A stretch of DNA of 63,089 nt, counting the filler, from Octopus bimaculoides (lineage: Eukaryota): the NCBI RefSeq assembly GCF_001194135.2. It is 5 parts of 5 records of this genome, joined end to end, with 100 filler letters (N's around TTAATTAATTAA, not from the genome) between each part and the next. Parts side by side here need not be neighbours in the genome. Positions count along the whole stretch, not along the records: positions 31,328 to 46,722 come from NC_069005.1; 4 more parts are not named here. One strand, written 5' to 3'. Positions 31,328-42,005 of this stretch are shown here, piece by piece (position 1 is the first letter of the stretch; each line of letters starts with the position of its first letter). Below the pieces are notes generated by a model. It was given only the letters and a program-made list of their open reading frames with translations, was not told the DNA's origin and searched no databases. A program made the position numbers and the translations under genes.

Positions 31328-32520
31328 ATCATTGTATTTTCTTCAAAAATATTTAAGATTTCAGTAAGCTTTCAAAGAACGATAAAGATACCGAGAGAGG
31401 CACGTGCTACACGACTCCAGGCAGATATGTGCAGCTTTCCAACAGCACGAAGTGCTTCTGTTTGAGGAGGGAGAGAGTTGACGACACTCACAGATTTTAG
31501 TTCATACCTGGACGGTCTGACGTGACTCTCGGAAGCGGACGTGACTCTCGGAAGCGGACGTGAGGTTTCTCCTGGGGGACTCTAGGCGTCGGTAATAACG
31601 AACTGGCTAATCTGTTCCAGAAGACTTTCCAGTCGGGAATTACCTTGGATAATTTCCTGGCAGTGTTACCGAGGGGTGCTACAGGTTCGAGACAAGCTCG
31701 TCAGAGATGTGCTCAGAGAGAGGAAACCGTTCTACACGCACTCGTTCAATGTCCGAACACTGTTGACTCGCTGAGTTATGTCAAACATCTCCTGTCACGT
31801 GTGGAACGGATCTGTCTGTGTTGTGTCGACGCCCCCAGGCGAAGAAGTAGGATCTCCCAAGACATATAAAGAGAGGTAGTCTGGCCGTGGCAGGAGTGTT
31901 GAGTAGCAGTTGTGCAGCGGTTGAGTAGAGATCATCCAAAGATGCTAGATAGCAGTAACTTGAGACATAACAGTCTGTTAGCCAAGTACATAGAGATTAT
32001 TGCCTCGCCACCTTCCTATAATTGAGTAGGTGATGCAGTTTTCTTTGTCTGGTAGCAATTGCGAAAGAGGTTGTTTGATGGATGAAGCTGAAAGGCATGA
32101 GGACAGAGACTTTCCTGTTTGGTAGATCCCTTATCGACATTTTCAAGTTTAACTTGAAAAGCAAAATGAAGACAGAGAGGGAGGTGCTGCCCTCGAAAGG
32201 TTGCAAAAATAAAAGTTGGTACTGCTCTAAGTACAGACATATGAGTCGCAGAACAGGAATTGGAGAGGGCACTTGCTCTTGTGTTCAGGGAAATCTTGGT
32301 TGGTGGTGTCCCTTGATTACCCCCCAGAGGTCCTCCTGTATTACGAGAACAACATCACTATCATTCTTTTTCCTTTTCTTTTCTTTTACAGTCGTATACT
32401 CTCTATCTTTCCTTTGTTTTATTGTAATTTTTTTGATCGTTTCATTATATGTAAAAACCCTCAAACCTTGTCTTCCCATTGTCCCATTCATCCGTCGCTC
32501 TGGTTGTAAATAAAAGAAAA
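31328..32520 (+). mobile_element. Tx1/L1-like LINE 3' end with 3' UTR and polyA signal
   Basis: CAQREETVLHALVQCP (C..C...E...H....C zinc knuckle of zf-RVT) and FLFGRSLIDIFKFNLKSKMKTERE, then a pyrimidine-rich UTR, aataaa near 32510 and an A/TAT-rich tail. Confidence 0.75.
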
Positions 32521-32834
32521 TATTATTATTATACTTATTGTTGTTGTTACTGTTGCTGTTTTGTTGTTGCCGCTAATGCTGCAGTTGTTGTTGTTAATCC
32601 TCATCATCAAAGTCATCTAGTCGTCGTCATCATCATCATCATTTCTATTATTAAAGTTGTGAGCTGACAGAAACCTTAGAGCATTGTACAAAACGCTCAG
32701 CAGCATTTTCCTTCCGGCTCTTTACAATCTCGGTTCAAATCCCACCGAGGTCAACTTTACCGTTCTTTCCTTCTGATCATTAAACACCGATGTCTATATG
32801 ATCGACTTATGATGTGCCTAAAATTTGAATCTAT

Positions 32835-32886
<52 letters not shown>

Positions 32887-33225
32887 CATTATTATTATTA
32901 TTATTATTATTATCATTATTATTATTATCGTTGTTCAGTAGTTTTATTTTTATAACGTGCTTTCACTTCACTACCGAGCGCAGCTCTGTGCGCCTTGGGT
33001 ATGTGCTGTGGTTTGCTGTGATGCTCTTATGGTTACTGTGTTGAAAGTGTTTTGCATAGGATGTGTGCAGTGCCCAGTAGTGCAATTTTCTGTATGTTAT
33101 ATATATTTGTCACATACAGAAAATTGCACTACTGGGCACTGCATTTATTATTATTATTATTATTATTATCATCATCATCATCATTATTATTATCATTATT
33201 ATTATTATTATCAATATTACTATTA

Positions 33226-33257
<32 letters not shown>

Positions 33258-33267
33258 CATTATGCAG

Positions 33268-33406
33268 GTTTTTGATGCATTTATTGTGATCGCTTCTTTC
33301 GCCCTGGATTTTGTATTCCTGGATAGCCAATGGTATGAGACGGGTAAAGATGCAAGTACTATTCTGGTTTTGTTGCTTCCTTGGCGCGTCGTTCGGATAG
33401 TTAACA
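33268..33406 (+). CDS. Hv3: Hv-family voltage-sensor exon, S3-S4 (VFDAFIVIASFALDFVFLDSQWYETGKDASTILVLLLPWRVVRIVN)
   Basis: tgcag| acceptor and |gtaagt donor, phase 0 to 1. S3 FDAFIV..SF.LD and S4 WRxxRIxN are Hv hallmarks. Pro replaces the first S4 Arg, as in molluscan Hv3. Confidence 0.92.
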
Positions 33407-33802
33407 GTAAGTGAACAATAATAATGTTGTTGTTAATGCTGTGGTCATGCCTTTAGATGTAATTAATTGGAGCCTTTAATCAAATCCTCTTACTGATCAG
33501 TCAGTCAGACAGACTATATCAAAGTATACAATATCATGGGTCAATTTCAGCTCATCATATCAATCAATTTTGCACTTGGTATCAGATGATACAGTGGTTT
33601 ACTTACACCACGTGGTTTTTAGTGATGGCAAGCATGAAAACAACATGGTGAATCAGTGCGAAATCGATTGGCTGAAAAAGATCTTTAATGCTGTGTACTT
33701 TAATGTATACCCACTCAATTGAGAACTATATATATATATGTGCGTGTGCGTGTGTGCATGAAATTGACAAATATATGAGTGCTTTTTCTTTACTTTATGG
33801 GT

Positions 33803-33855
<53 letters not shown>

Positions 33856-34987
33856 NNNNNNNNNNNNNNNNNNNNNNNNNNNNNNNNNNNNNNNNNNNNN
33901 NNNNNNNNNNNNNNNNNNNNNNNNNNNNNNNNNNNNNNNNNNNNNNNNNNNNNNNNNNNNNNNNNNNNNNNNNNNNNNNNNNNNNNNNNNNNNNNNNNNN
34001 NNNNNNNNNNNNNNNNNNNNNNNNNNNNNNNNNNNNNNNNNNNNNNNNNNNNNNNNNNNNNNNNNNNNNNNNNNNNNNNNNNNNNNNNNNNNNNNNNNNN
34101 NNNNNNNNNNNNNNNNNNNNNNNNNNNNNNNNNNNNNNNNNNNNNNNNNNNNNNNNNNNNNNNNNNNNNNNNNNNNNNNNNNNNNNNNNNNNNNNNNNNN
34201 NNNNNNNNNNNNNNNNNNNNNNNNNNNNNNNNNNNNNNNNNNNNNNNNNNNNNNNNNNNNNNNNNNNNNNNNNNNNNNNNNNNNNNNNNNNNNNNNNNNN
34301 NNNNNNNNNNNNNNNNNNNNNNNNNNNNNNNNNNNNNNNNNNNNNNNNNNNNNNNNNNNNNNNNNNNNNNNNNNNNNNNNNNNNNNNNNNNNNNNNNNNN
34401 NNNNNNNNNNNNNNNNNNNNNNNNNNNNNNNNNNNNNNNNNNNNNNNNNNNNNNNNNNNNNNNNNNNNNNNNNNNNNNNNNNNNNNNNNNNNNNNNNNNN
34501 NNNNNNNNNNNNNNNNNNNNNNNNNNNNNNNNNNNNNNNNNNNNNNNNNNNNNNNNNNNNNNNNNNNNNNNNNNNNNNNNNNNNNNNNNNNNNNNNNNNN
34601 NNNNNNNNNNNNNNNNNNNNNNNNNNNNNNNNNNNNNNNNNNNNNNNNNNNNNNNNNNNNNNNNNNNNNNNNNNNNNNNNNNNNNNNNNNNNNNNNNNNN
34701 NNNNNNNNNNTATATATATATATATGTATATGTATATATATTGCATTTCAAAACACCTTGGGTGGAAAATCTTCAGGGCATAAAAAAGGACAATACAGAG
34801 GCTACATTTTGATTGGTTGAAATACTCCAATATATATTCATAGTTTTCTACCACGCTCTTACTTTCTTATCATTTCATGCTTTCCCACCCTATTTCTCTC
34901 TCACTTAATCATCCACACTTCCACTCACTTTCAAATTCACACATTCTCTCTCTCTCTTTCTTTTTTTTTTTCTCTTTTTTTTTCCAG

Positions 34988-35103
34988 GTTTCCTGATGAC
35001 AGTCAACAGGAAACATCACATAGAAATTATGACTGTTAGAAAATCCAAGAAAAAAGCAGACATGAAAATCATTAAATTACAGGCACTGATAAACGAAATC
35101 ACT
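34988..35103 (+). CDS. Hv3: Hv3-like exon, end of S4 and start of coiled coil (S-FLMTVNRKHHIEIMTVRKSKKKADMKIIKLQALINEIT)
   Basis: Long polypyrimidine tract plus ccag|, donor |gtaagt. Phase 1 to 0 joins the previous exon exactly (A+GT=Ser). Confidence 0.9.
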
Positions 35104-36347
35104 GTAAGTACCTGGAATTGAAACCCTCATAATGGGTTGTACAACGCTCCTTACTAACACCAAGGTCGTGGTCTTTTTGCTCTTATTCATAATTGCCGAT
35201 ATTGTTGTTGTTGTTGTTCTGATTGTATCTATGTAATTGCTTAATTGCTTTGTGTACGCGTCTGAATGAGGGAAATACGTGAATCTGAAACTGTTTAAAT
35301 GTATAGGTACGACCATATGTATTCCTGTGTCTATACACACACACACGCACGCGCGCGCGCACACACACACATACACACACACATATGCACCTATACACGC
35401 ACACATATTTACATATGTATAGAACAACCTAATGTTTTACACACTCCACCTCAAACCGTACCACAACCTACAGCAGCACTCTCCATCTCGTCATAGACAC
35501 AACAACATACTGCCGCACTCTACACCAGATCATACCCAACTGTCCCTCGTTCTTCTCCCGGCACTCGACATCATACGGTACCTCACTACGTCAAATTAAA
35601 CCACACCNNNNNNNNNNNNNNNNNNNNNNNNNNNNNNNNNNNNNNNNNNNNNNNNNNNNNNNNNNNNNNNNNNNNNNNNNNNNNNNNNNNNNNNNNNNNN
35701 NNNNNNNNNNNNNNNNNNNNNNNNNNNNNNNNNNNNNNNNNNNNNNNNNNNNNNNNNNNNNNNNNNNNNNNNNNNNNNNNNNNNNNNNNNNNNNNNNNNN
35801 NNNNNNNNNNNNNNNNNNNNNNNNNNNNNNNNNNNNNNNNNNNNNNNNNNNCCCAACTGTCCCTCGTTCTTCTCCCGGCACTCGACATCATACGGTACCT
35901 CACTACGTCAAATTAAACCACACCATACTTCAGCACCCTGCACTGCATCGCACCACAAAGATACTCCAGCATTCGACACTCCCCAGCCTCCTACGAAATG
36001 TCGCACTTCATACAGATTACACTACATGACACAACATTCACCTACTTTTAGACCACATCATTCTCCAGCAATCTACAGTGCTCTATAATTGTCTGCAATA
36101 CAACGTACAATACTCTACACCACAACGCAACATATTGCACAACAACATACCCCATCACTCTCCACCTCACCACAAGACACGACACCATTCTTCAGCACTG
36201 CACAGCACGCAAAACCACACTACAACTAACCATACATCTTACCACTTTATCCCAGACCACACAACACTCAACTGTTCTGCGCGACACTACACCATACTCC
36301 AGCAATCAACATCACAGTGCACAACATCATACTCAAATACTCTACAC

Positions 36348-36704
36348 AAGGCCTAGCCAACTCGAATTACATTGCGGCCCACTTTAATCACAGAAAGTTT
36401 ATTGAGGGCCATTTGTATACTGACAGAATTGAAAGCATTTTGCTTTCCCATGCTATTATTGCAATAATAAATGAACGATCGTCGATTCAACATGACGTGT
36501 TATCGTTGCAAAAACCGGAAGTATCTTTCTTTTTTACTTTTCACTACAATCTTTAATTTTTGATAATTTTTTTTAAATACTTGTTTAAATAAACCCATTT
36601 CAAGGAAGTATCAAGCGGGCCGCCGCAAGATAAAAGTCTGCGGGCCGCAAGATAAAAGTCTGCTGGCCGCATGCGGCCCGCTGGCCTCAGGTTGGCCAGC
36701 CCTG
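36348..36704. mobile_element. hAT-type MITE (~357 bp) in an Hv3 intron
   Basis: 14-bp imperfect TIRs aaggcctagccaac / gttggccagccctg. 8-bp TSD ctctacac (36340-36347) / ctctacag (36705-36712). Subterminal gcgggccgca repeats. Confidence 0.75.
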
Positions 36705-37021
36705 CTCTACAGTACCACAGTACCATTCTACAGCACTCCACAGTACCATTCTACAATATAACACACCATACGCCAGTATTTCCACGCCACACTACACACT
36801 AGCATTCTCTAGTACTCTGCACTACACCACAAAATACTCCAGTCTCTATACCATACCACACTACGCCAAAACATATTCCAGCACTCAATCTTCCACCACA
36901 CGCCACGTTACAACACGCAACAACATACTACAGCACTCTACAGCACTATACCTGTTACACTGTACCATGTGTCTTAGTACCTTATTGCTCTTTACCACAC
37001 TACAACACACAACTCTACATA

Positions 37022-37088
<67 letters not shown>

Positions 37089-37690
37089 ACCACACCAAAC
37101 TACATTCTTTGTCACACCACCCCATATCACGCTTCACCTAACCCCATCGCTCTGCCTCTATCTACACCACACTACTCTGCTCACTCTACACAACGCATCA
37201 CTCAATGCAACACCATCCTATACCATTCACACCCACAGTACACCACACTATACTACATTACATCGCACTACAGCAAACCATACAGAAACTTCCCTACCAC
37301 TTCTAGTGACAACCTAGAATTCTCCAGTGTACTGAAAGAAAATATTGCAGGCATTAACAATTTCAGAATTCTCGTTGTCTGGTGAAAGTTCTGACAGTTT
37401 ATCATCCAAAATCAAAATGTTTGATAACCAAATTAAATCTTATCAATTGAAGATGGTCTTAGTTAAACATTGCGAGCTCTCATTTTATGCAAAATAAAGA
37501 AAGTTACTGTGTTTAACGGTTAAACTATTGAGACACGTTGCTTCGAATCCCAGAGCTTTTCTTGCGTTGGAAATAACATGTGACTATTAAGGTTGAAATA
37601 TTACGAAGCATTACTCTAAACAACTTATTTTTGTTCATAATTTTTAATTGCCTTGTTACCTTATCACTCGCGTCTTCTATTTTGTTTCAG

Positions 37691-37763
37691 AGAGATGTAG
37701 AGTTACTTGTAGCGCTTAGCAGAAGCAGAGGCGCCCCAGAACATGAAATAACCGCGTGTCTTT
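37691..37763 (+). CDS. Hv3: Hv3-like exon (RDVELLVALSRSRGAPEHEITACL)
   Basis: tttgtttcag| acceptor, |gtaagt donor, phase 0 to 1. Continues the coiled-coil heptad. Confidence 0.85.
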
Positions 37764-38327
37764 GTAAGTATTCGCCAGATTGAGTTGGAATTCTGTCTGC
37801 ACAGAAGTTTTTAAAAATACTATCTTCAGTTCTAATAAATTGTAAAACCGTGATTTCTGATACACGCGATCTTGTCCAGAAATGGGCAAAGAGGAATCTG
37901 TCCCTGTCAGACAGAGGTGGGGATTGTGTACATTGCTCCTGTCATCTACTACCGCCTGACTGTCATCCCTTGCTTCATTGCTAATCAGTCTAGAGCGCTT
38001 ACTTTTCTTGAAATATAACATATACACCCACTATCCATTTTTCATCTTCGATATCTCATTGTTGTTTATATTAGGCGTGATCGGATACGAAACGTCGTCA
38101 CAAGATCCATGCAGGCTATAATTCCTATTGAAAATCCGTAAACATTAACCATCACAAATTTTGTCCATTGTGATAATAATTTTATCATTCTTCACTGATA
38201 ATAATATTTTGAATCGATTTTTCTGTGTAAACGTATTTTTATTTGATTTTTCTTTGTAAATGTATTTTTATTTGATTTTAATATTATTTGTTTTTTCTTT
38301 TTCTTTTTTTTTTCTTTGTTATGCCAG

Positions 38328-38977
38328 ATGGAAAAGGCCGGCGTGGTGTGGCCATGTCAGCCATTTCCTCGTTTGCGTCACTGATGCTCATCTCTACGTT
38401 GGGCAAGAGTAACGTGGCAGGGGACACGGAAGATGATCTTTATGGCCGCGCCCTCGAAGAGGCAATGAAAGACGATCAAGACGACAACGATGACACGGCA
38501 AACGGCATTCTCATGGAAGAAGACGAAGAAGAAGATGACGACGACGATGACGACGAAGAAGATAGGGTCGGTGACGACGATGATGACGACGACGACGACA
38601 ATGACAATGACAATGACATTGAAAGCGGACAACGAAGCTCAATTAGTTCAGCAATGGACGAAAACTTAAACTGTCGACGAGCCGTGAAAATGGCACGAAA
38701 TAAAGCTGCAGCAGCAGCGGCGGCGGCGGCGGCAGCAGCAGCAGCAGCTGCCAGTATTGCAGGTAGCAGTAGTTCTGCAAGTACTTCATATGCTCGTCGC
38801 AACACTATTCCACAGCCAGTGTTGGCAACTTCAAACCGCAGCAGTATGCTATATTATATTAACAACGGCTATGCACTCCACGAACCAGATGATTCGGATA
38901 CGGATCGGCGGCCAAGTCTTCTAAGTACTAACTCTATCCATAGTCTCCCCGGGTTACCAACAAGTGACACTTTTTTG
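38328..38977 (+). CDS. Hv3: Hv3-like long C-terminal exon (Y-GKGRRGVAMSAISSFASLMLISTLGK...D/E tract...poly-Ala...RRNT...RRPS...SDTFL)
   Basis: Strong polypyrimidine tract plus ccag|. Phase 1 start completes a TAT codon with the previous exon. 216 further open codons, then donor TTG|gtaagt in phase 0. Confidence 0.85.
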
Positions 38978-39279
38978 GTAAGTGCCTTTCTTTGTCATAA
39001 TCTATGTCCGATTTCTTCACGCCATTTGTTACAAATTGTCAGAAATATTCATAAACACACTCGATTACGTATCTAATTTTTCTGCCAAAGAATTTTAACC
39101 TTATTGCAGAAGTAGATATGTAGAATTCTCCCCTTGAGGTAAGTATTTTGGAGCGAAGCTTCAAGGTGTTGGGAAATATAAACAGAATTGTTTCTTGTAG
39201 GTCTCTTTTGCCGAAACGCACCAACACCGGTAGTCAAGTGGTGTTGGGGGACAAACAGAGATATATATATAGAGAGAGA

Positions 39280-40143
39280 GAGGGTACGGTGAATAAACTG
39301 TCGTCTAAATTACGCAAAAATGAAAATAACACTCACATCTCATTTTAACAAATATATTTACCAAAATTACATAAAACTATCTTGAAATACTAAAGAGTAA
39401 ATTCACTCAATAAAATCGCCATTGGCTTCAACCACGGCCTCCAGACGACTTCGGAATTTCCTGCAGCTCATCTGGACGGTCTCCTTGTTTAAGTTGGTGA
39501 ATGCTGCCGTAATCCTTGCCATCATCTTTAGTGTTACAAGAAGTTTCCTTGATCTCTCGATCAACTGCGCCCCACACATAATAATGAAGGAGGCTGCAGT
39601 CTTGGGAGTTAAGTGACCAGATGCTAGGGGTGATGTGGTCGCAGAAATTGTCTAACAGCCATGACTGGGTTCTCTTGCTTGTGTGGCATGGTGCAGAGTC
39701 CTGTTGCCACTCAGAGTCTTCCAGTAGCCACCCTCTTGACACAGGGCAGCACTGTCTCTTCCAGGCACCTGATGGAGGCCTCTGTGTCGAGTCTGAGGCC
39801 GTGTGGGAAGATGGAGGCATAACGTCACCATCACTAGTGATCACTCCAAACACCATGATGTTGACTGGATGTTTGATTTTTTTTTCACCCTCGATACAGA
39901 TTGCATTGTCCTCGTATTGACACCCAAACGCTCTGAAATGTTCGTATTGGAGCTTCCAGCGCGAATACCAAGCAGCACAGCATGTCATTTCCAAATTTCT
40001 AGCAGAGTGAATTGCTGTTTTTTTCTCGCAGACGATGCCCAACTGACCCTACCATATTGTATAGTCGATAAAATAAAATAAAAACAATGCGCATGCGCGA
40101 AATTAAAAATATAAAATGATGACGATTTATTCATCGCACCCTG
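39280..40143 (-). mobile_element. Internally deleted maT (DD37D-type Tc1/mariner) element
   Basis: TIRs agggtacggtgaataaactgtcgtc (39281) and gacgatttattcatcgcaccctg+TA (to 40143). Transposase remnant KHPVNIMVFGVITSDGDVMPP...WQQDSAPCHTSKRTQSWL...NSQDCSLLHYYVWG, with 37 residues between D and the (mutated, H) third catalytic position. Confidence 0.85.
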
Positions 40144-40154
40144 TATATATGCAC

Positions 40155-40313
40155 GGCGGGCTCCTTTCTGTTTCCATCAACCAAATCCACTCTCAGAGCT
40201 TTGGTCGGCCCAAGACTGTAGTCGAAGAAAGACACTTGCCAAAGGTGCCTCGCAGTGGGACTGAACCCTGAACCATGTGGTTGGGAAGGAAACCTTTTAC
40301 CACAAAGCCACGC
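40155..40313 (-). mobile_element. tRNA-derived SINE (second family)
   Basis: Reverse complement carries ggttcagggttcagtcccactgcg (B-box-like), then gcaagtgtct...gggccgaccaaagc...gtggatttggttga. A sister copy is at 58720-58858. Confidence 0.8.
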
Positions 40314-41969
40314 TTTTTTAATTCAGGCAATTCCAGTGGATTCGTCATGGTTTAAATTTAATTTTTCTGTTACTTGAAAGACTAGCGCTATAAATACTAA
40401 AAGCTTGGTTCTTTTACATATTTTGTTTAAGATCATTCTGAAGAATGAAAACAAGCATTAGTCTACATGAATTCACATTAGAGGCTTCAGTTCTTGAGAC
40501 CTATATACAAGTTCAATATGGAGTCTAATGTCCACTTGAAATCTGTGAGTAATGATGGACAAGATGTATTTCAGAAGAAAGTTAATAATTCAAGGAGTTC
40601 CCCAGAAGATACATATGTCATAAGTTCTAAAGCTTTTGTGTGGTATGATGGTGTAACACTTTACAGCAATAGCCGTTTGTTGGAGTCGTTAAATGTAATA
40701 ATTTAGCGACTTCTGGGAGTACACTTGTCCGAAGTTCTATGCAGTGGGACTGAACCCATATTTTTGTTGGTGATGATGTGGGTGAAGTTTAGATAATTAA
40801 CATAGGCGTACTTTATAACACTAAATGTCGCATACTGAAGAGAAAATTGTACCTTAAGGTTGTGGATATTACAGGCAATATGGAGTAGAAGTAATGTAAA
40901 TAACTAATGAGCGAAACACTCCGTAAAATACTTTTTTTTTTATAGTGTATCAAGATATAGAGGAATCATGGACGGAAGTAGAAGATGAACAGGAGCATAG
41001 TGTGTTTAGGGCTCATTTAATGCCGAGGTTCTGTTGGTGCTTGAACGCTGGTTCATAGGGATTAAGAGTATAGCAAAAAATATCGAGTAAAGCCCGCGTT
41101 TTTAAAAGTGTTAAGATGACATGGTTGATGGGGAAATAAGTCAGTTGAGTATTCCAACGTGACGGACAGATTTTCCACATTCGTTTTGCTTTGAATACCT
41201 TTCTAAAGGGGTTGTTTTACTCAAAACACCAGCACTAGTTAAATATTTCTAAGATAACCTTGGCTCAGCACCTTTTGTAACACGCAATTTTTCTATATAT
41301 TTTATAAGCAATCTATGTGTGTTCATGTGCAATGGTGAAACGTTTTATTCAATACATACCATCACCAAGTGACATTTCCTCAATTTGTTCAGTCAATAAT
41401 ATATCGAATTTAATTAGAATAAGTGTCACGAGCGTTTACATAGGAAAGGTTCTACCCTACACGAGAACTTCAATTTTTGTTTTTATGTAGAGTTAGAATA
41501 CGAACCAGAAAATTAAGGTCGGTAGATTGATGCCGCATTAGTTCAGCTGCCTGCTATTATGGAAACTGAAAAAAAAAATGAGTTTGCGAGAATTACTAGT
41601 AAAGAGGAGATACATTTGTGTGATTTGTTATTAAGGAGGAGATAAATTTGTGGGTTGTGTGAGTAAAGGGGAGATAAATCTATTTGATACGTGAGTAAAG
41701 AAGAGTCTTCTTTGCAGGAAAGAGTTTTGATTAACCATGACAGGCTCTGTTTCACAGTACACCAGCTTAGTTTATTTCACGATTAAATTAAACTTTGTTA
41801 TTTCATTGTTTTATTTTAAAACTCTAAAATCGATTCGTTTTTCTTTAATACTAAATATGTTTAGCTTCTCTCTCACGTCACTATTTTTAATTTTCCTTCT
41901 TTCGATCTTTTTTATATCCATAATTTTCCCTCTATTTTCTTTTGTCTTATTTTTTGCTGTGTTTTCTAG

Positions 41970-42005
41970 AGTTTTGACGTGGCAACACAAATGACCTACC
42001 TGTGA
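41970..42005 (+). CDS. Hv3: Hv3-like terminal coding exon (SFDVATQMTYL*)
   Basis: A very long pyrimidine tract ends ttttctag|. Phase 0 matches the 38977 donor. TGA at 42003-42005. The end conforms to a class I PDZ ligand (T-x-L). Confidence 0.7.
   Translation, partial: SFDVATQMTYL

What the first reader, a model, noticed from the sequence alone, without database searches (positions are those of the whole stretch)
33268..35103. Hv-family proton channel with a non-canonical LPWRxxRxxN voltage sensor (Hv3 type)
Seen: the spliced exons give ...STILVLLLPWRVVRIVNSFLMTV, so only two S4 arginines remain and Pro (CCT) sits where Hv1 has its first Arg (RLWRxxRIxN). Established: Aplysia californica has three Hv genes, and AcHv3 lacks the first S4 Arg, is weakly voltage dependent and leaks protons. 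Inference: this is the cephalopod Hv3 orthologue, a candidate constitutive proton-leak channel. It could matter for acid-base handling or neuronal pH. I know of no functional work on a cephalopod Hv3, but I cannot check that here.
Basis: partly seen in the sequence, partly recalled or inferred. Interest (0 to 1): 0.85.

Follow-up and report, generated by a model that had tools for sequence, protein, structure and literature searches.

The report
Hv3-type proton channel gene fragment

Summary
Exon A (33268-33406) and exon B (34988-35103) have canonical AG/GT borders and splice in frame to ...STILVLLLPWRVVRIVNSFLMTV.... The assembly gap (33856-34710) lies wholly inside the intron. Four ungapped orthologous loci and the annotated proteins of at least nine species join the same two exons directly, so the gap does not affect the reading.

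Three more exons of the same gene follow: C 37691-37763, D 38328-38977 and E 41970-42005. Together the five exons give the C-terminal 337 aa, from S3 to the stop codon. The exons for S1 and S2 lie beyond the left edge of the piece.

Hv-family membership is solid. A profile of the clade hits Hv1 in the PDB at E 1.9e-13, against 0.019 for Ci-VSP. hhalign against conventional Hv1 gives 99.8% probability.

The S4 is the published "Hv3-type" xPWRxxR. AcHv3 itself (Aplysia LOC101855857) is only about 36% identical. The gene belongs to another paralogue clade (Aplysia LOC101852977, Haliotis LOC124141029; 66-78% identical). Members of that clade carry Glu, not Asp, at the S1 selectivity position, and none has been tested.

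"Cephalopod" is unverified: the only Octopus match is a different paralogue at 35-40%. Proton leak is an inference by analogy. Verdict: a new member of a known kind, of modest interest.

The parts
33268..33406 (+). Exon A: second half of S3, S3-S4 loop and S4 (VFDAF...LLLPWRVVRIVN); ends in phase 1
   Evidence: Canonical AG/GT borders. 87-93% protein identity to exons in L001-L004. PDB best hit is Hv1.
33376..33405 (+). S4 signature LPWRVVRIVN. Leu is at the R1 position, Pro (CCT, 33379-33381) at the L206 position. Trp, R2, R3 and Asn214 are kept.
   Evidence: The same motif occurs in over 100 library proteins.
33407..34987 (+). Intron A-B, containing the assembly gap 33856-34710 flanked by (CA)n and (TA)n
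   Evidence: Orthologous introns without gaps measure 272-2851 nt.
34988..35103 (+). Exon B: post-S4 helix (SFLMTVNRKHHIEIMTVRKSKKKADMKIIKLQALINEIT), first part of the homologue of the Hv1 coiled coil
37691..37763 (+). Exon C: RDVELLVALSRSRGAPEHEITACL, end of the coiled-coil homologue; ends in phase 1
   Evidence: tblastn with orthologues. Borders read. 100% protein identity in L005. Aligned to the end of the Hv1 coiled coil by hhalign.
38328..38977 (+). Exon D: cytoplasmic tail. It holds the conserved block YGKGRR..SFASLMLISTLGK, a 65-residue block that is 60% Asp/Glu, a poly-Ala run, and the conserved blocks RRxTxP and YYINNGY.
   Evidence: 79% protein identity in L005.
41970..42005 (+). Exon E: last coding exon, SFDVATQMTYL plus TGA
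   Evidence: DVATQMTYL is identical in L005. Orthologues end in FEVTTQVTYL.
39431..40042 (-). Tc1/mariner-type transposase remnant inside intron D-E (not part of the gene)

Best explanation
The piece carries the 3' half (five exons, 337 codons, + strand, 33268-42005) of a gene for a voltage-sensor-only membrane protein of the Hv (voltage-gated proton channel) family. It is of the lophotrochozoan 'unconventional/Hv3-type' group, whose S4 reads xPWRxxR. Within that group it belongs to the clade of Aplysia LOC101852977 and Haliotis LOC124141029, not to the AcHv3 clade.

Shown:
- The exon structure.
- The S3 acidic residues (equivalents of D174 and D185).
- An S4 with Leu-Pro in place of Arg-Leu, and with W, R2, R3 and N214 kept.
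- A post-S4 helix homologous to the Hv1 coiled coil.
- A long acidic tail that ends in -TYL.
- Purifying selection on the coding sequence.

Inferred from the orthologues, because the 5' exons are off the piece: S1 carries Glu at the selectivity position (D112 of Hv1), S2 has Met where Hv1 has F150, and a long S1-S2 loop is present.

Inferred mechanism. Protons would pass through the voltage-sensor domain itself, selected by the S1 carboxylate paired with an S4 arginine. Glu works in this role in the stick-insect channel EtHv1 and in Asp-to-Glu mutants (PMC10377628). With only two S4 charges and a helix-perturbing Pro, gating should be weakly voltage dependent and perhaps leaky, as measured for AcHv3. 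The coiled-coil homologue suggests a dimer. The tail probably sets location, possibly in intracellular membranes as proposed for AcHv3. My estimates are about 0.95 for family and clade assignment and about 0.5 for 'proton-selective, weakly voltage dependent or leaky'.
For: Exons and frame. Orthologous exon pairs with identical splice phases in L001-L004. Exons C-E conserved in L005, while the introns do not align.

Family: phmmer against the PDB puts Hv1 (5oqk, 3wkv) on top. The clade profile against the PDB gives Hv1 1.9e-13 and 1.5e-11, and Ci-VSP next at 0.019. hhalign against a conventional Hv1 profile gives 99.8% probability, E 1.8e-29, over 161 columns from S2 to the end of the coiled coil.

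Clade: best library matches are 67-79% identical over residues 1-84 and are named as gastropod and bivalve proteins. Aplysia LOC101852977 from the review supplement matches block for block. NJ bootstrap for the clade is 76%, with AcHv3 and the Octopus protein outside it. Identity matrix. Full-length alignment, including the shared C-terminal end.

Glu in S1 of all five orthologues whose S1 is known (four library proteins, plus Aplysia LOC101852977 read from the review supplement). Selection: pN 0.09-0.19 against pS 0.73-0.93. AcHv3 properties and the sufficiency of Glu.
Against: - No S1 or S2 sequence for this gene is in the piece, so the selectivity residue is not seen here.
- No transcript or current is available for this gene or for any member of its clade.
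- AcHv3, the only tested xPWR channel, is about 36% identical over S3-S4, so its biophysics may not transfer.
- Pfam Ion_trans does not reach threshold, even for the full-length orthologues.
- The AlphaFold model of the Haliotis orthologue was poor (pLDDT 47), and Foldseek gave only non-significant voltage-sensor matches.
- Bootstrap support rests on 85 columns.
Confidence: 0.85

Rival explanations
1. One reading: this is the cephalopod one-to-one orthologue of AcHv3 and shares its constitutive proton leak.
For: Same LPWRxxR motif. Octopus relatives of the Aplysia Hv genes are mentioned in PMC10911540. The window's distance to gastropod members (72-78%) is of the same order as the Octopus-Aplysia distance in the sister clade (67%), so a cephalopod source is not excluded.
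Against: AcHv3 (P0069) is 36-37% identical, against 66-78% for the LOC101852977-like clade. It falls outside the window's clade in the trees. The downstream exons and the C-terminal end match the other clade. No cephalopod protein of this clade appeared in two library searches, although Octopus vulgaris proteins are present in the library.
Confidence: 0.05
2. The protein keeps the voltage-sensor fold but no longer conducts protons. It would be a sensor or scaffold, like the non-conducting Hv relative TMEM266/HVRP1 or the voltage sensor of VSP.
For: R1 is lost and Pro is inserted. The orthologues have Met where Hv1 has F150 and Glu where it has D112. The tail is large and has a PDZ-ligand-like end. 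The 2023 review itself warns that some mollusc duplicates may no longer be proton channels.
Against: AcHv3, with the same S4 changes, conducts protons selectively. A carboxylate plus an Arg counter-charge is the stated minimal selectivity filter, and Glu works naturally in EtHv1. W207, R2, R3, N214, D174 and D185 are conserved under strong purifying selection.
Confidence: 0.25
3. A decaying pseudogene, or chance open frames in repeat-rich DNA.
For: Only the 3' half is present. The locus is full of microsatellites, gaps and a transposon remnant.
Against: All five exons are open, with canonical splice sites and matching phases. pN is far below a saturated pS against five other genomes. The protein aligns end to end, including the stop-proximal motif. 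The missing 5' half is explained by the edge of the piece.
Confidence: 0.04
4. A voltage-sensor domain of another family (VSP/TPTE, or a Cav, Nav or CatSper repeat).
For: Weak profile matches to Ci-VSP, CatSper1, T-type Cav and the SLC9C1 voltage sensor (E 0.02-0.05). Foldseek's best, non-significant, match is Nav1.7 VSD4.
Against: Hv1 scores at least ten orders of magnitude better. The S4 Trp and the coiled-coil homologue are Hv-specific features. Neither the window's tail nor the full-length orthologues show a phosphatase or pore domain.
Confidence: 0.01

Closest known systems
Aplysia californica LOC101852977 (XM_013090418) and its relatives: Haliotis rufescens LOC124141029, Pomacea LOC112560398, Physella LOC131938628, Mactra, Mya and Dreissena 'HVCN1-like' proteins
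   Same: S3-S4 is 66-78% identical. The S4 is the same (LLLPWRVVRIVNSF). The exon A/B junction, the post-S4 helix, the YGKGRR..ASLMLISTLGK block, the acidic tail, the YYINxG block and the ...TQVTYL end are all shared.
   Different: The window's tail has a much longer Asp/Glu run and a poly-Ala run. The source lineage lies outside the sampled gastropods and bivalves. These relatives are listed as putative Hv channels but none has been tested.
AcHv3 (Aplysia LOC101855857, XP_005094274; Chaves et al. 2022, PMC10911540)
   Same: xPWRxxR S4 without R1. Long loops and tail. Same large family. It is the only member with recordings: proton selective, e-fold conductance change per about 60 mV, and a leak.
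   Different: Only 36-37% identical over S3-S4. S4 continues ...RVVNSL rather than ...RIVNSF. S1 has Asp, whereas the window's clade has Glu. Different tail and C-terminal end. It is a paralogue, not an orthologue.
Hv1 / HVCN1 (human 5oqk, mouse chimera 3wkv)
   Same: Voltage-sensor-only architecture. D174, D185, W207, R208, R211 and N214 are kept, and there is a coiled-coil homologue after S4.
   Different: R205 becomes Leu and L206 becomes Pro. In the orthologues D112 becomes Glu and F150 becomes Met, with a very long S1-S2 loop. The tail after the coiled coil is about 230 residues.
EtHv1 (stick insect Hv with natural Glu selectivity filter)
   Same: Glu at the S1 selectivity position, as in the orthologues of the window's gene. 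Proton selectivity is retained.
   Different: EtHv1 has a conventional RxWRxxR S4 and is a small protein from an unrelated lineage.
Octopus vulgaris CAI9740694 (P0022) and Aplysia LOC101862058
   Same: Also xPWRxxR...NSF, with a conserved ...FASLA...-type block in the tail.
   Different: A different paralogue clade (97% bootstrap, window outside). 35-40% identity. Asp in S1. Ends in -T(K/R)L.

Membership tests
Hv (voltage-gated proton channel) family | Sequence closer to Hv1 than to any other voltage-sensor protein | tested here: met
   phmmer: Hv1 at 1.3e-4 and 4.8e-4 are the only channel hits. Clade profile: Hv1 1.9e-13, next Ci-VSP 0.019. hhalign: 99.8%, E 1.8e-29.
Hv (voltage-gated proton channel) family | Four transmembrane helices S1-S4 and no pore domain | tested here: inconclusive
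   The window holds only S3 (from its middle) and S4, and no S5-S6 follows. S1 and S2 were not found in 31328-33267 and must lie beyond the edge. The full-length orthologues have S1-S4 only.
Hv (voltage-gated proton channel) family | S4 signature RxWRxxR with the Hv-specific Trp | tested here: not met
   The canonical form is not met: LPWRVVR has Trp, R2, R3 and the following Asn but lacks R1. This is the published variant signature of the Hv3 group.
Hv (voltage-gated proton channel) family | Carboxylate (Asp or Glu) at the S1 selectivity position | not testable with these tools
   The S1 exon is not in the piece. Orthologues (Haliotis, Physella, Mactra, Mya, Aplysia LOC101852977) have Glu.
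Hv (voltage-gated proton channel) family | Cytoplasmic coiled coil directly after S4 | tested here: met
   Exons B and C align to the Hv1 coiled-coil region as far as its ...LLxxHGI end. The AF2 model of the orthologue has one continuous helix 335-406 running from S4 (low confidence). The heptad pattern is only moderate, 9 of 15.
Hv (voltage-gated proton channel) family | Proton-selective current | not testable with these tools
   Needs electrophysiology. Recordings exist only for the paralogue AcHv3.
Unconventional 'HV3' family, as defined in the 2023 review of Chaves et al. | No R1, and Pro directly before the S4 Trp (xPWRxxR) | tested here: met
   LLLPWRVVRIVN, with CCT at 33379-33381.
Unconventional 'HV3' family, as defined in the 2023 review of Chaves et al. 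| Large intracellular domain | tested here: met
   291 residues follow the S4 Asn.
Unconventional 'HV3' family, as defined in the 2023 review of Chaves et al. | Very long extracellular S1-S2 loop | not testable with these tools
   That region is outside the piece. It is about 190-640 residues in the orthologues.
AcHv3 orthologue group (Aplysia LOC101855857) | AcHv3 is the closest Aplysia paralogue and groups with the gene in a tree | tested here: not met
   36% identity to AcHv3 against 69% to LOC101852977. AcHv3 lies outside the window's clade.
Cephalopod gene | Nearest relatives, or flanking DNA, are from cephalopods | tested here: inconclusive
   The nearest named proteins are from gastropods and bivalves. 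The only Octopus hit is another paralogue. The transposon remnant gave no named hits. The Octopus locus DNA could not be fetched. No eukaryotic nucleotide database is available here.

The most novel reading that the evidence does not exclude
The window's clade combines a Glu selectivity residue, a two-arginine LPWR S4, Met at the F150 charge-transfer position and a PDZ-ligand-like -TYL end. It could be a functionally distinct class of Hv protein: for example a nearly voltage-independent proton shunt anchored at a defined membrane site, or a voltage sensor that has given up conduction. That would make it more than a mere copy of AcHv3. No member has been recorded.
Probability: 0.3. Interest if true: 0.55.

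Novelty: new member of a known kind. Interest (0 to 1): 0.3.

Why it matters
Hv channels are a tiny family in vertebrates but have expanded widely in molluscs, and only AcHv3 among the xPWR-type proteins has been recorded. This gene shows that the LPWR sensor occurs in at least three old paralogue clades. It also marks one clade, with Glu in S1 and an end in ...TQVTYL, that is conserved under strong purifying selection in gastropods, bivalves and the unknown source of this piece, yet has no functional data. Recording one member would show whether loss of R1 plus the Pro always gives a leaky, weakly voltage-dependent proton path, or whether the rest of the sensor compensates. For this particular locus the value is mainly annotation: five exons, a gap that is harmless, and a corrected orthology.

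Tried and rejected
- Pfam on the 85-aa and 337-aa peptides and on the full-length orthologues gave no Ion_trans hit at threshold and only low-complexity noise on the acidic tail. It was therefore not usable as a membership test.
- AlphaFold2 of the Haliotis orthologue with a 10-row alignment gave mean pLDDT 47 and pTM 0.32. Foldseek against the PDB gave nothing below E 2. This is inconclusive.
- The search for the upstream S1/S2/S3 exons in 31328-33267 with orthologue segments found nothing credible.
- Four routes to the source organism failed. The first protein search returned only unnamed single-exon fragments. The transposase remnant matched only unnamed proteins, at 47-51%. DNA of the Octopus P0022 locus could not be fetched because the gene spans 149 kb. 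DNA comparison with L001-L005 aligns exons only.
- Rfam and tRNA scans of the piece found nothing.
It was replaced by a numpy NJ with 500 replicates.
- I rejected the idea that the gap hides a coding exon. A 272-nt ungapped intron in L004, and direct junctions in all annotated orthologues, argue against it.
- Batillaria P0014 joins exon A directly to exon D. Skipping exons B and C (189 nt) keeps the frame, so this is either an isoform or an annotation artefact. I did not pursue it.
Full report
**1. The observation**

Exon A is 33268-33406. It is preceded by ...cattatgcag and followed by gtaagtgaac. Exon B is 34988-35103. It is preceded by ...ttttttccag and followed by gtaagtacct. Spliced, the two give 255 nt with no stop: VFDAFIVIASFALDFVFLDSQWYETGKDASTILVLLLPWRVVRIVN-S-FLMTVNRKHHIEIMTVRKSKKKADMKIIKLQALINEIT. 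The Ser codon is split across the junction (A|GT).

S4 contains two arginines, and the Pro codon is CCT (33379-33381). One detail is off. Against Hv1 RLWRVARIIN (alignment), Leu replaces R205 and Pro replaces L206. The Pro thus sits next to the R1 position, not in it. This is exactly the published LPWRxxR motif.

**2. The gap**

The N run 33856-34710 starts 450 nt after the donor of exon A and ends 277 nt before the acceptor of exon B. It lies between a (CA)n and a (TA)n run. It is intronic, and the frame is set by the splice phases, not by the length of the gap.

Independent support comes from four contigs of other organisms that carry the same exon (L001-L004). All have the exon B homologue downstream, with the same donor (...AA[CT] A|gtaag) and the same acceptor phase. 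Their introns are ungapped, at 1263, 1784, 2851 and 272 nt. Annotated proteins of Haliotis, Pomacea, Physella and others align to residues 1-84 of the spliced peptide without a gap. I conclude that the gap hides no constitutive coding exon. An alternative exon cannot be ruled out.

**3. The rest of the gene**

The exhaustive HMMER search with the 85-aa peptide gave 202 hits, seven of them below 1e-30. Using the full-length hits as tblastn queries on the piece revealed three more exons on the same strand. I read their borders and checked the phases.
- Exon C is 37691-37763 (RDVELLVALSRSRGAPEHEITACL; tttgtttcag|...|gtaagt, ends in phase 1).
- Exon D is 38328-38977. It begins AT, completing Tyr, and reads YGKGRRGVAMSAISSFASLMLISTLGK..., then an acidic block, a poly-Ala run, ...RRNTIPQP...YYINNGYAL...SDTFL|gtaagt.
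- Exon E is 41970-42005 (ttttctag|SFDVATQMTYL-TGA).

The five exons give 337 codons. These align end to end with the C-terminal halves of the orthologues, including the terminal F(E/D)V(T/A)TQ(V/M)TYL.

A fifth locus from a nearer relative (L005, found through P0178) keeps exons C, D and E at 100%, 79% and 100% protein identity, while its introns do not align. Across all these comparisons the synonymous differences are saturated (pS 0.73-0.93) and the non-synonymous ones are low (pN 0.09-0.19). The coding sequence is therefore under purifying selection. The exons for the N-terminus, S1, the S1-S2 loop, S2 and the start of S3 were not found in 31328-33267 and must lie beyond the left edge.

**4. 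Which family**

Pfam was silent, even for the full-length orthologues. Three other tests are clear.
- The 85-aa peptide alone finds only Hv1 among PDB channels (5oqk at 1.3e-4, 3wkv at 4.8e-4).
- A profile of the clade (alignment A1) finds Hv1 at 1.9e-13 and 1.5e-11. Next come Ci-VSP at 0.019, then CatSper1, T-type Cav and the SLC9C1 voltage sensor at 0.04-0.05.
- hhalign of that profile against a profile of conventional RLWRxxR Hv proteins gives 99.8% probability and E 1.8e-29 over 161 columns, running from S2 to the end of the Hv1 coiled coil.

Exons B and C are thus the homologue of the coiled coil. TMEM266 could not be fetched for a direct test. However, the gene sits inside the xPWR clade that contains AcHv3, a proven proton channel.

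A fold-level test failed. AlphaFold2 of the Haliotis orthologue reached only pLDDT 47 and Foldseek returned nothing significant.

**5. Which member**

AcHv3 lacks R1 (L429) and has P430. It is proton selective, its conductance changes e-fold per about 60 mV, and it shows a proton leak. The authors note that weak voltage dependence alone may explain the leak. The 2023 review defines an 'unconventional HV3' family by xPWRxxR, large loops and large intracellular domains. It counts seven putative Hv genes in Aplysia and four in Octopus bimaculoides.

The review's supplement prints the Aplysia sequences. P0069 in my hit list is Aplysia LOC101855857, with L429/P430, which is AcHv3. It is only 36-37% identical to the window's S3-S4 segment. 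A different Aplysia gene, LOC101852977, matches the window block for block...FEVFDAFIVVSSFALDFVFLDSRWYETGKDATTILVLLLP[W]RVVRIVNSFLMT..., then RKDVQLLVAL..., then YGKGRRSVTLSAMSTCTSLMLISTLGKD.... The window is 72-78% identical to the other gastropod members and 66-71% to the bivalve members of that clade.

In NJ trees of the 85 aligned columns the xPWR proteins split into three groups.
- The window's clade (bootstrap 76%).
- A clade with Aplysia LOC101862058 and the Octopus vulgaris protein P0022 (97%).
- The ...NSL clade, which contains AcHv3.

The gene is therefore Hv3-type in the broad published sense, but it is a paralogue of AcHv3.

**6. Features of the clade that bear on function**

All five orthologues whose S1 is known have Glu where Hv1 has D112: VVIECVCVLVELMVDL, VVVECACVLAELMVDL, LVTLECMCVIAELMVDL, LVVTECLCVMAEIMVDL, and Aplysia LOC101852977. 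AcHv3 and the Octopus paralogue have Asp. According to the review, Glu at this position keeps proton selectivity, both naturally in EtHv1 and in Asp-to-Glu mutants. The stated minimal filter is a carboxylate plus an Arg or Lys counter-charge.

In S2 the clade has Met at the F150 position (alignment). In the window itself the equivalents of D174 and D185 (VFD..., ALD...), W207, R208, R211 and N214 are present.

After the coiled-coil homologue comes a conserved, moderately hydrophobic block (SFASLMLISTLGK), which recurs in other xPWR clades. Then follow a 65-residue block that is 60% Asp/Glu and the -TYL end. That end looks like a class I PDZ ligand. This last point is my inference and was not tested.

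**7. Most likely mechanism**

The gene most likely encodes a voltage-sensor-only protein that dimerises through the post-S4 helix. It would conduct protons through the sensor, between the S1 carboxylate and the S4 arginines. With only two gating charges and a Pro one residue before the Trp, it should respond weakly to voltage and may leak at rest, as AcHv3 does.

What is shown: the sequence features, homology and selection. What is inferred: conduction, selectivity, weak gating, dimerisation and location. I put about 0.5 on 'proton-selective and weakly voltage dependent or leaky' and about 0.25 on loss of conduction.

**8. The source organism**

I could not confirm a cephalopod. The named relatives of this clade are gastropods (Haliotis, Pomacea, Physella, Biomphalaria, Plakobranchus, Candidula, Batillaria, Aplysia) and bivalves (Mactra, Mya, Dreissena). 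Octopus vulgaris proteins are in the library, but the only one matched is the other paralogue, at 35-40%.

The window lies outside both the sampled gastropods (80-99% identical among themselves) and the sampled bivalves (74-87%). That pattern fits any other deep mollusc lineage, cephalopods included. The remaining routes failed: the transposon remnant, the Octopus locus DNA and the flanking DNA.

**9. Novelty and verdict**

The family, its S4 motif and the existence of octopus relatives are already published. The Aplysia orthologue of this very gene is listed in the review's supplement as a putative Hv channel. I found no functional work on this clade or on any cephalopod Hv in the held literature.

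The finding is a correct reading of the DNA and a mostly correct family call. The orthology is over-specific, the taxon is unverified, and the function is extrapolated. It is a new member of a known kind, with interest about 0.3.

Noticed in passing
window 35535-35607 and 35852-35924 (flanks of gap 35608-35851): The 73 nt before this second gap are repeated exactly (100%) right after it. This looks like an unmerged overlap at a scaffold join, so the gap may be spurious. It lies in intron B-C and does not touch coding sequence.
   Followed up: partly
window 33066-33143: A palindrome with 39-nt arms, 92% complementary, with no spacer. It sits between two (ATT/ATC)n microsatellite blocks (32805-32995 and 33115-33267). 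The second block runs right up to the acceptor of exon A, where a polypyrimidine tract would normally be.
   Followed up: no
window 35458-37170: About 1.7 kb of C/A-rich, degenerate repeats of about 31 nt (ACACAACAACATACTNCAGCACTCTACANCA-like) with strongly negative GC skew (-0.4 to -0.6). Nature unknown.
   Followed up: no
window 39431-40042, minus strand: A 204-codon open frame that is a remnant of a Tc1/mariner-type transposase, inside intron D-E. The best library proteins are 47-51% identical and carry HTH/DDE_3 domains.
   Followed up: partly
window 31645-31869, plus strand: A short open frame with a CxxC...ETxxHxLxxCP pattern and a weak Pfam zf-RVT match (E 0.07). It may be the 3' end of a non-LTR retrotransposon in the GC-richer stretch 31328-32300.
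   Followed up: no
library proteins P0016, P0018 (nemerteans Tubulanus, Lineus), P0021 (annelid Owenia), P0025 (brachiopod Lingula): These carry LLPWRVIRIVNCF, or LVPWRVIRIVNSF in Lingula. The 2023 review states that the S4 proline is missing in Nemertea and Annelida. On these sequences it is present, so the Pro may be older than the review proposes.
   Followed up: partly
library proteins P0052, P0060, P0072, P0079, P0082 and others: Two further groups lack R1 without having the Pro (FLLWRILRVING, LLLWRIARVVDG). One named member is from the annelid Owenia; most are unnamed single-exon fragments. They branch outside the xPWR clade.
   Followed up: no
P0014 (Batillaria attramentaria) against window exons B and C: This annotated protein joins the exon A sequence directly to the exon D sequence (...RIVNNGLGRR...). 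Exons B and C together are 189 nt, so skipping them keeps the frame and would delete the coiled-coil homologue. It is either an isoform or an annotation artefact.
   Followed up: no
P0075 (Pinctada imbricata): A member of the AcHv3-side clade with CMLPWGVIRVVNSL, that is, Gly in place of R2, the arginine reported as fully conserved in Hv channels.
   Followed up: no
Octopus vulgaris gene for P0022: The gene for this 599-aa Hv3-type protein spans about 149 kb in the Octopus assembly. By contrast the window's last five exons span about 8.7 kb.
   Followed up: no
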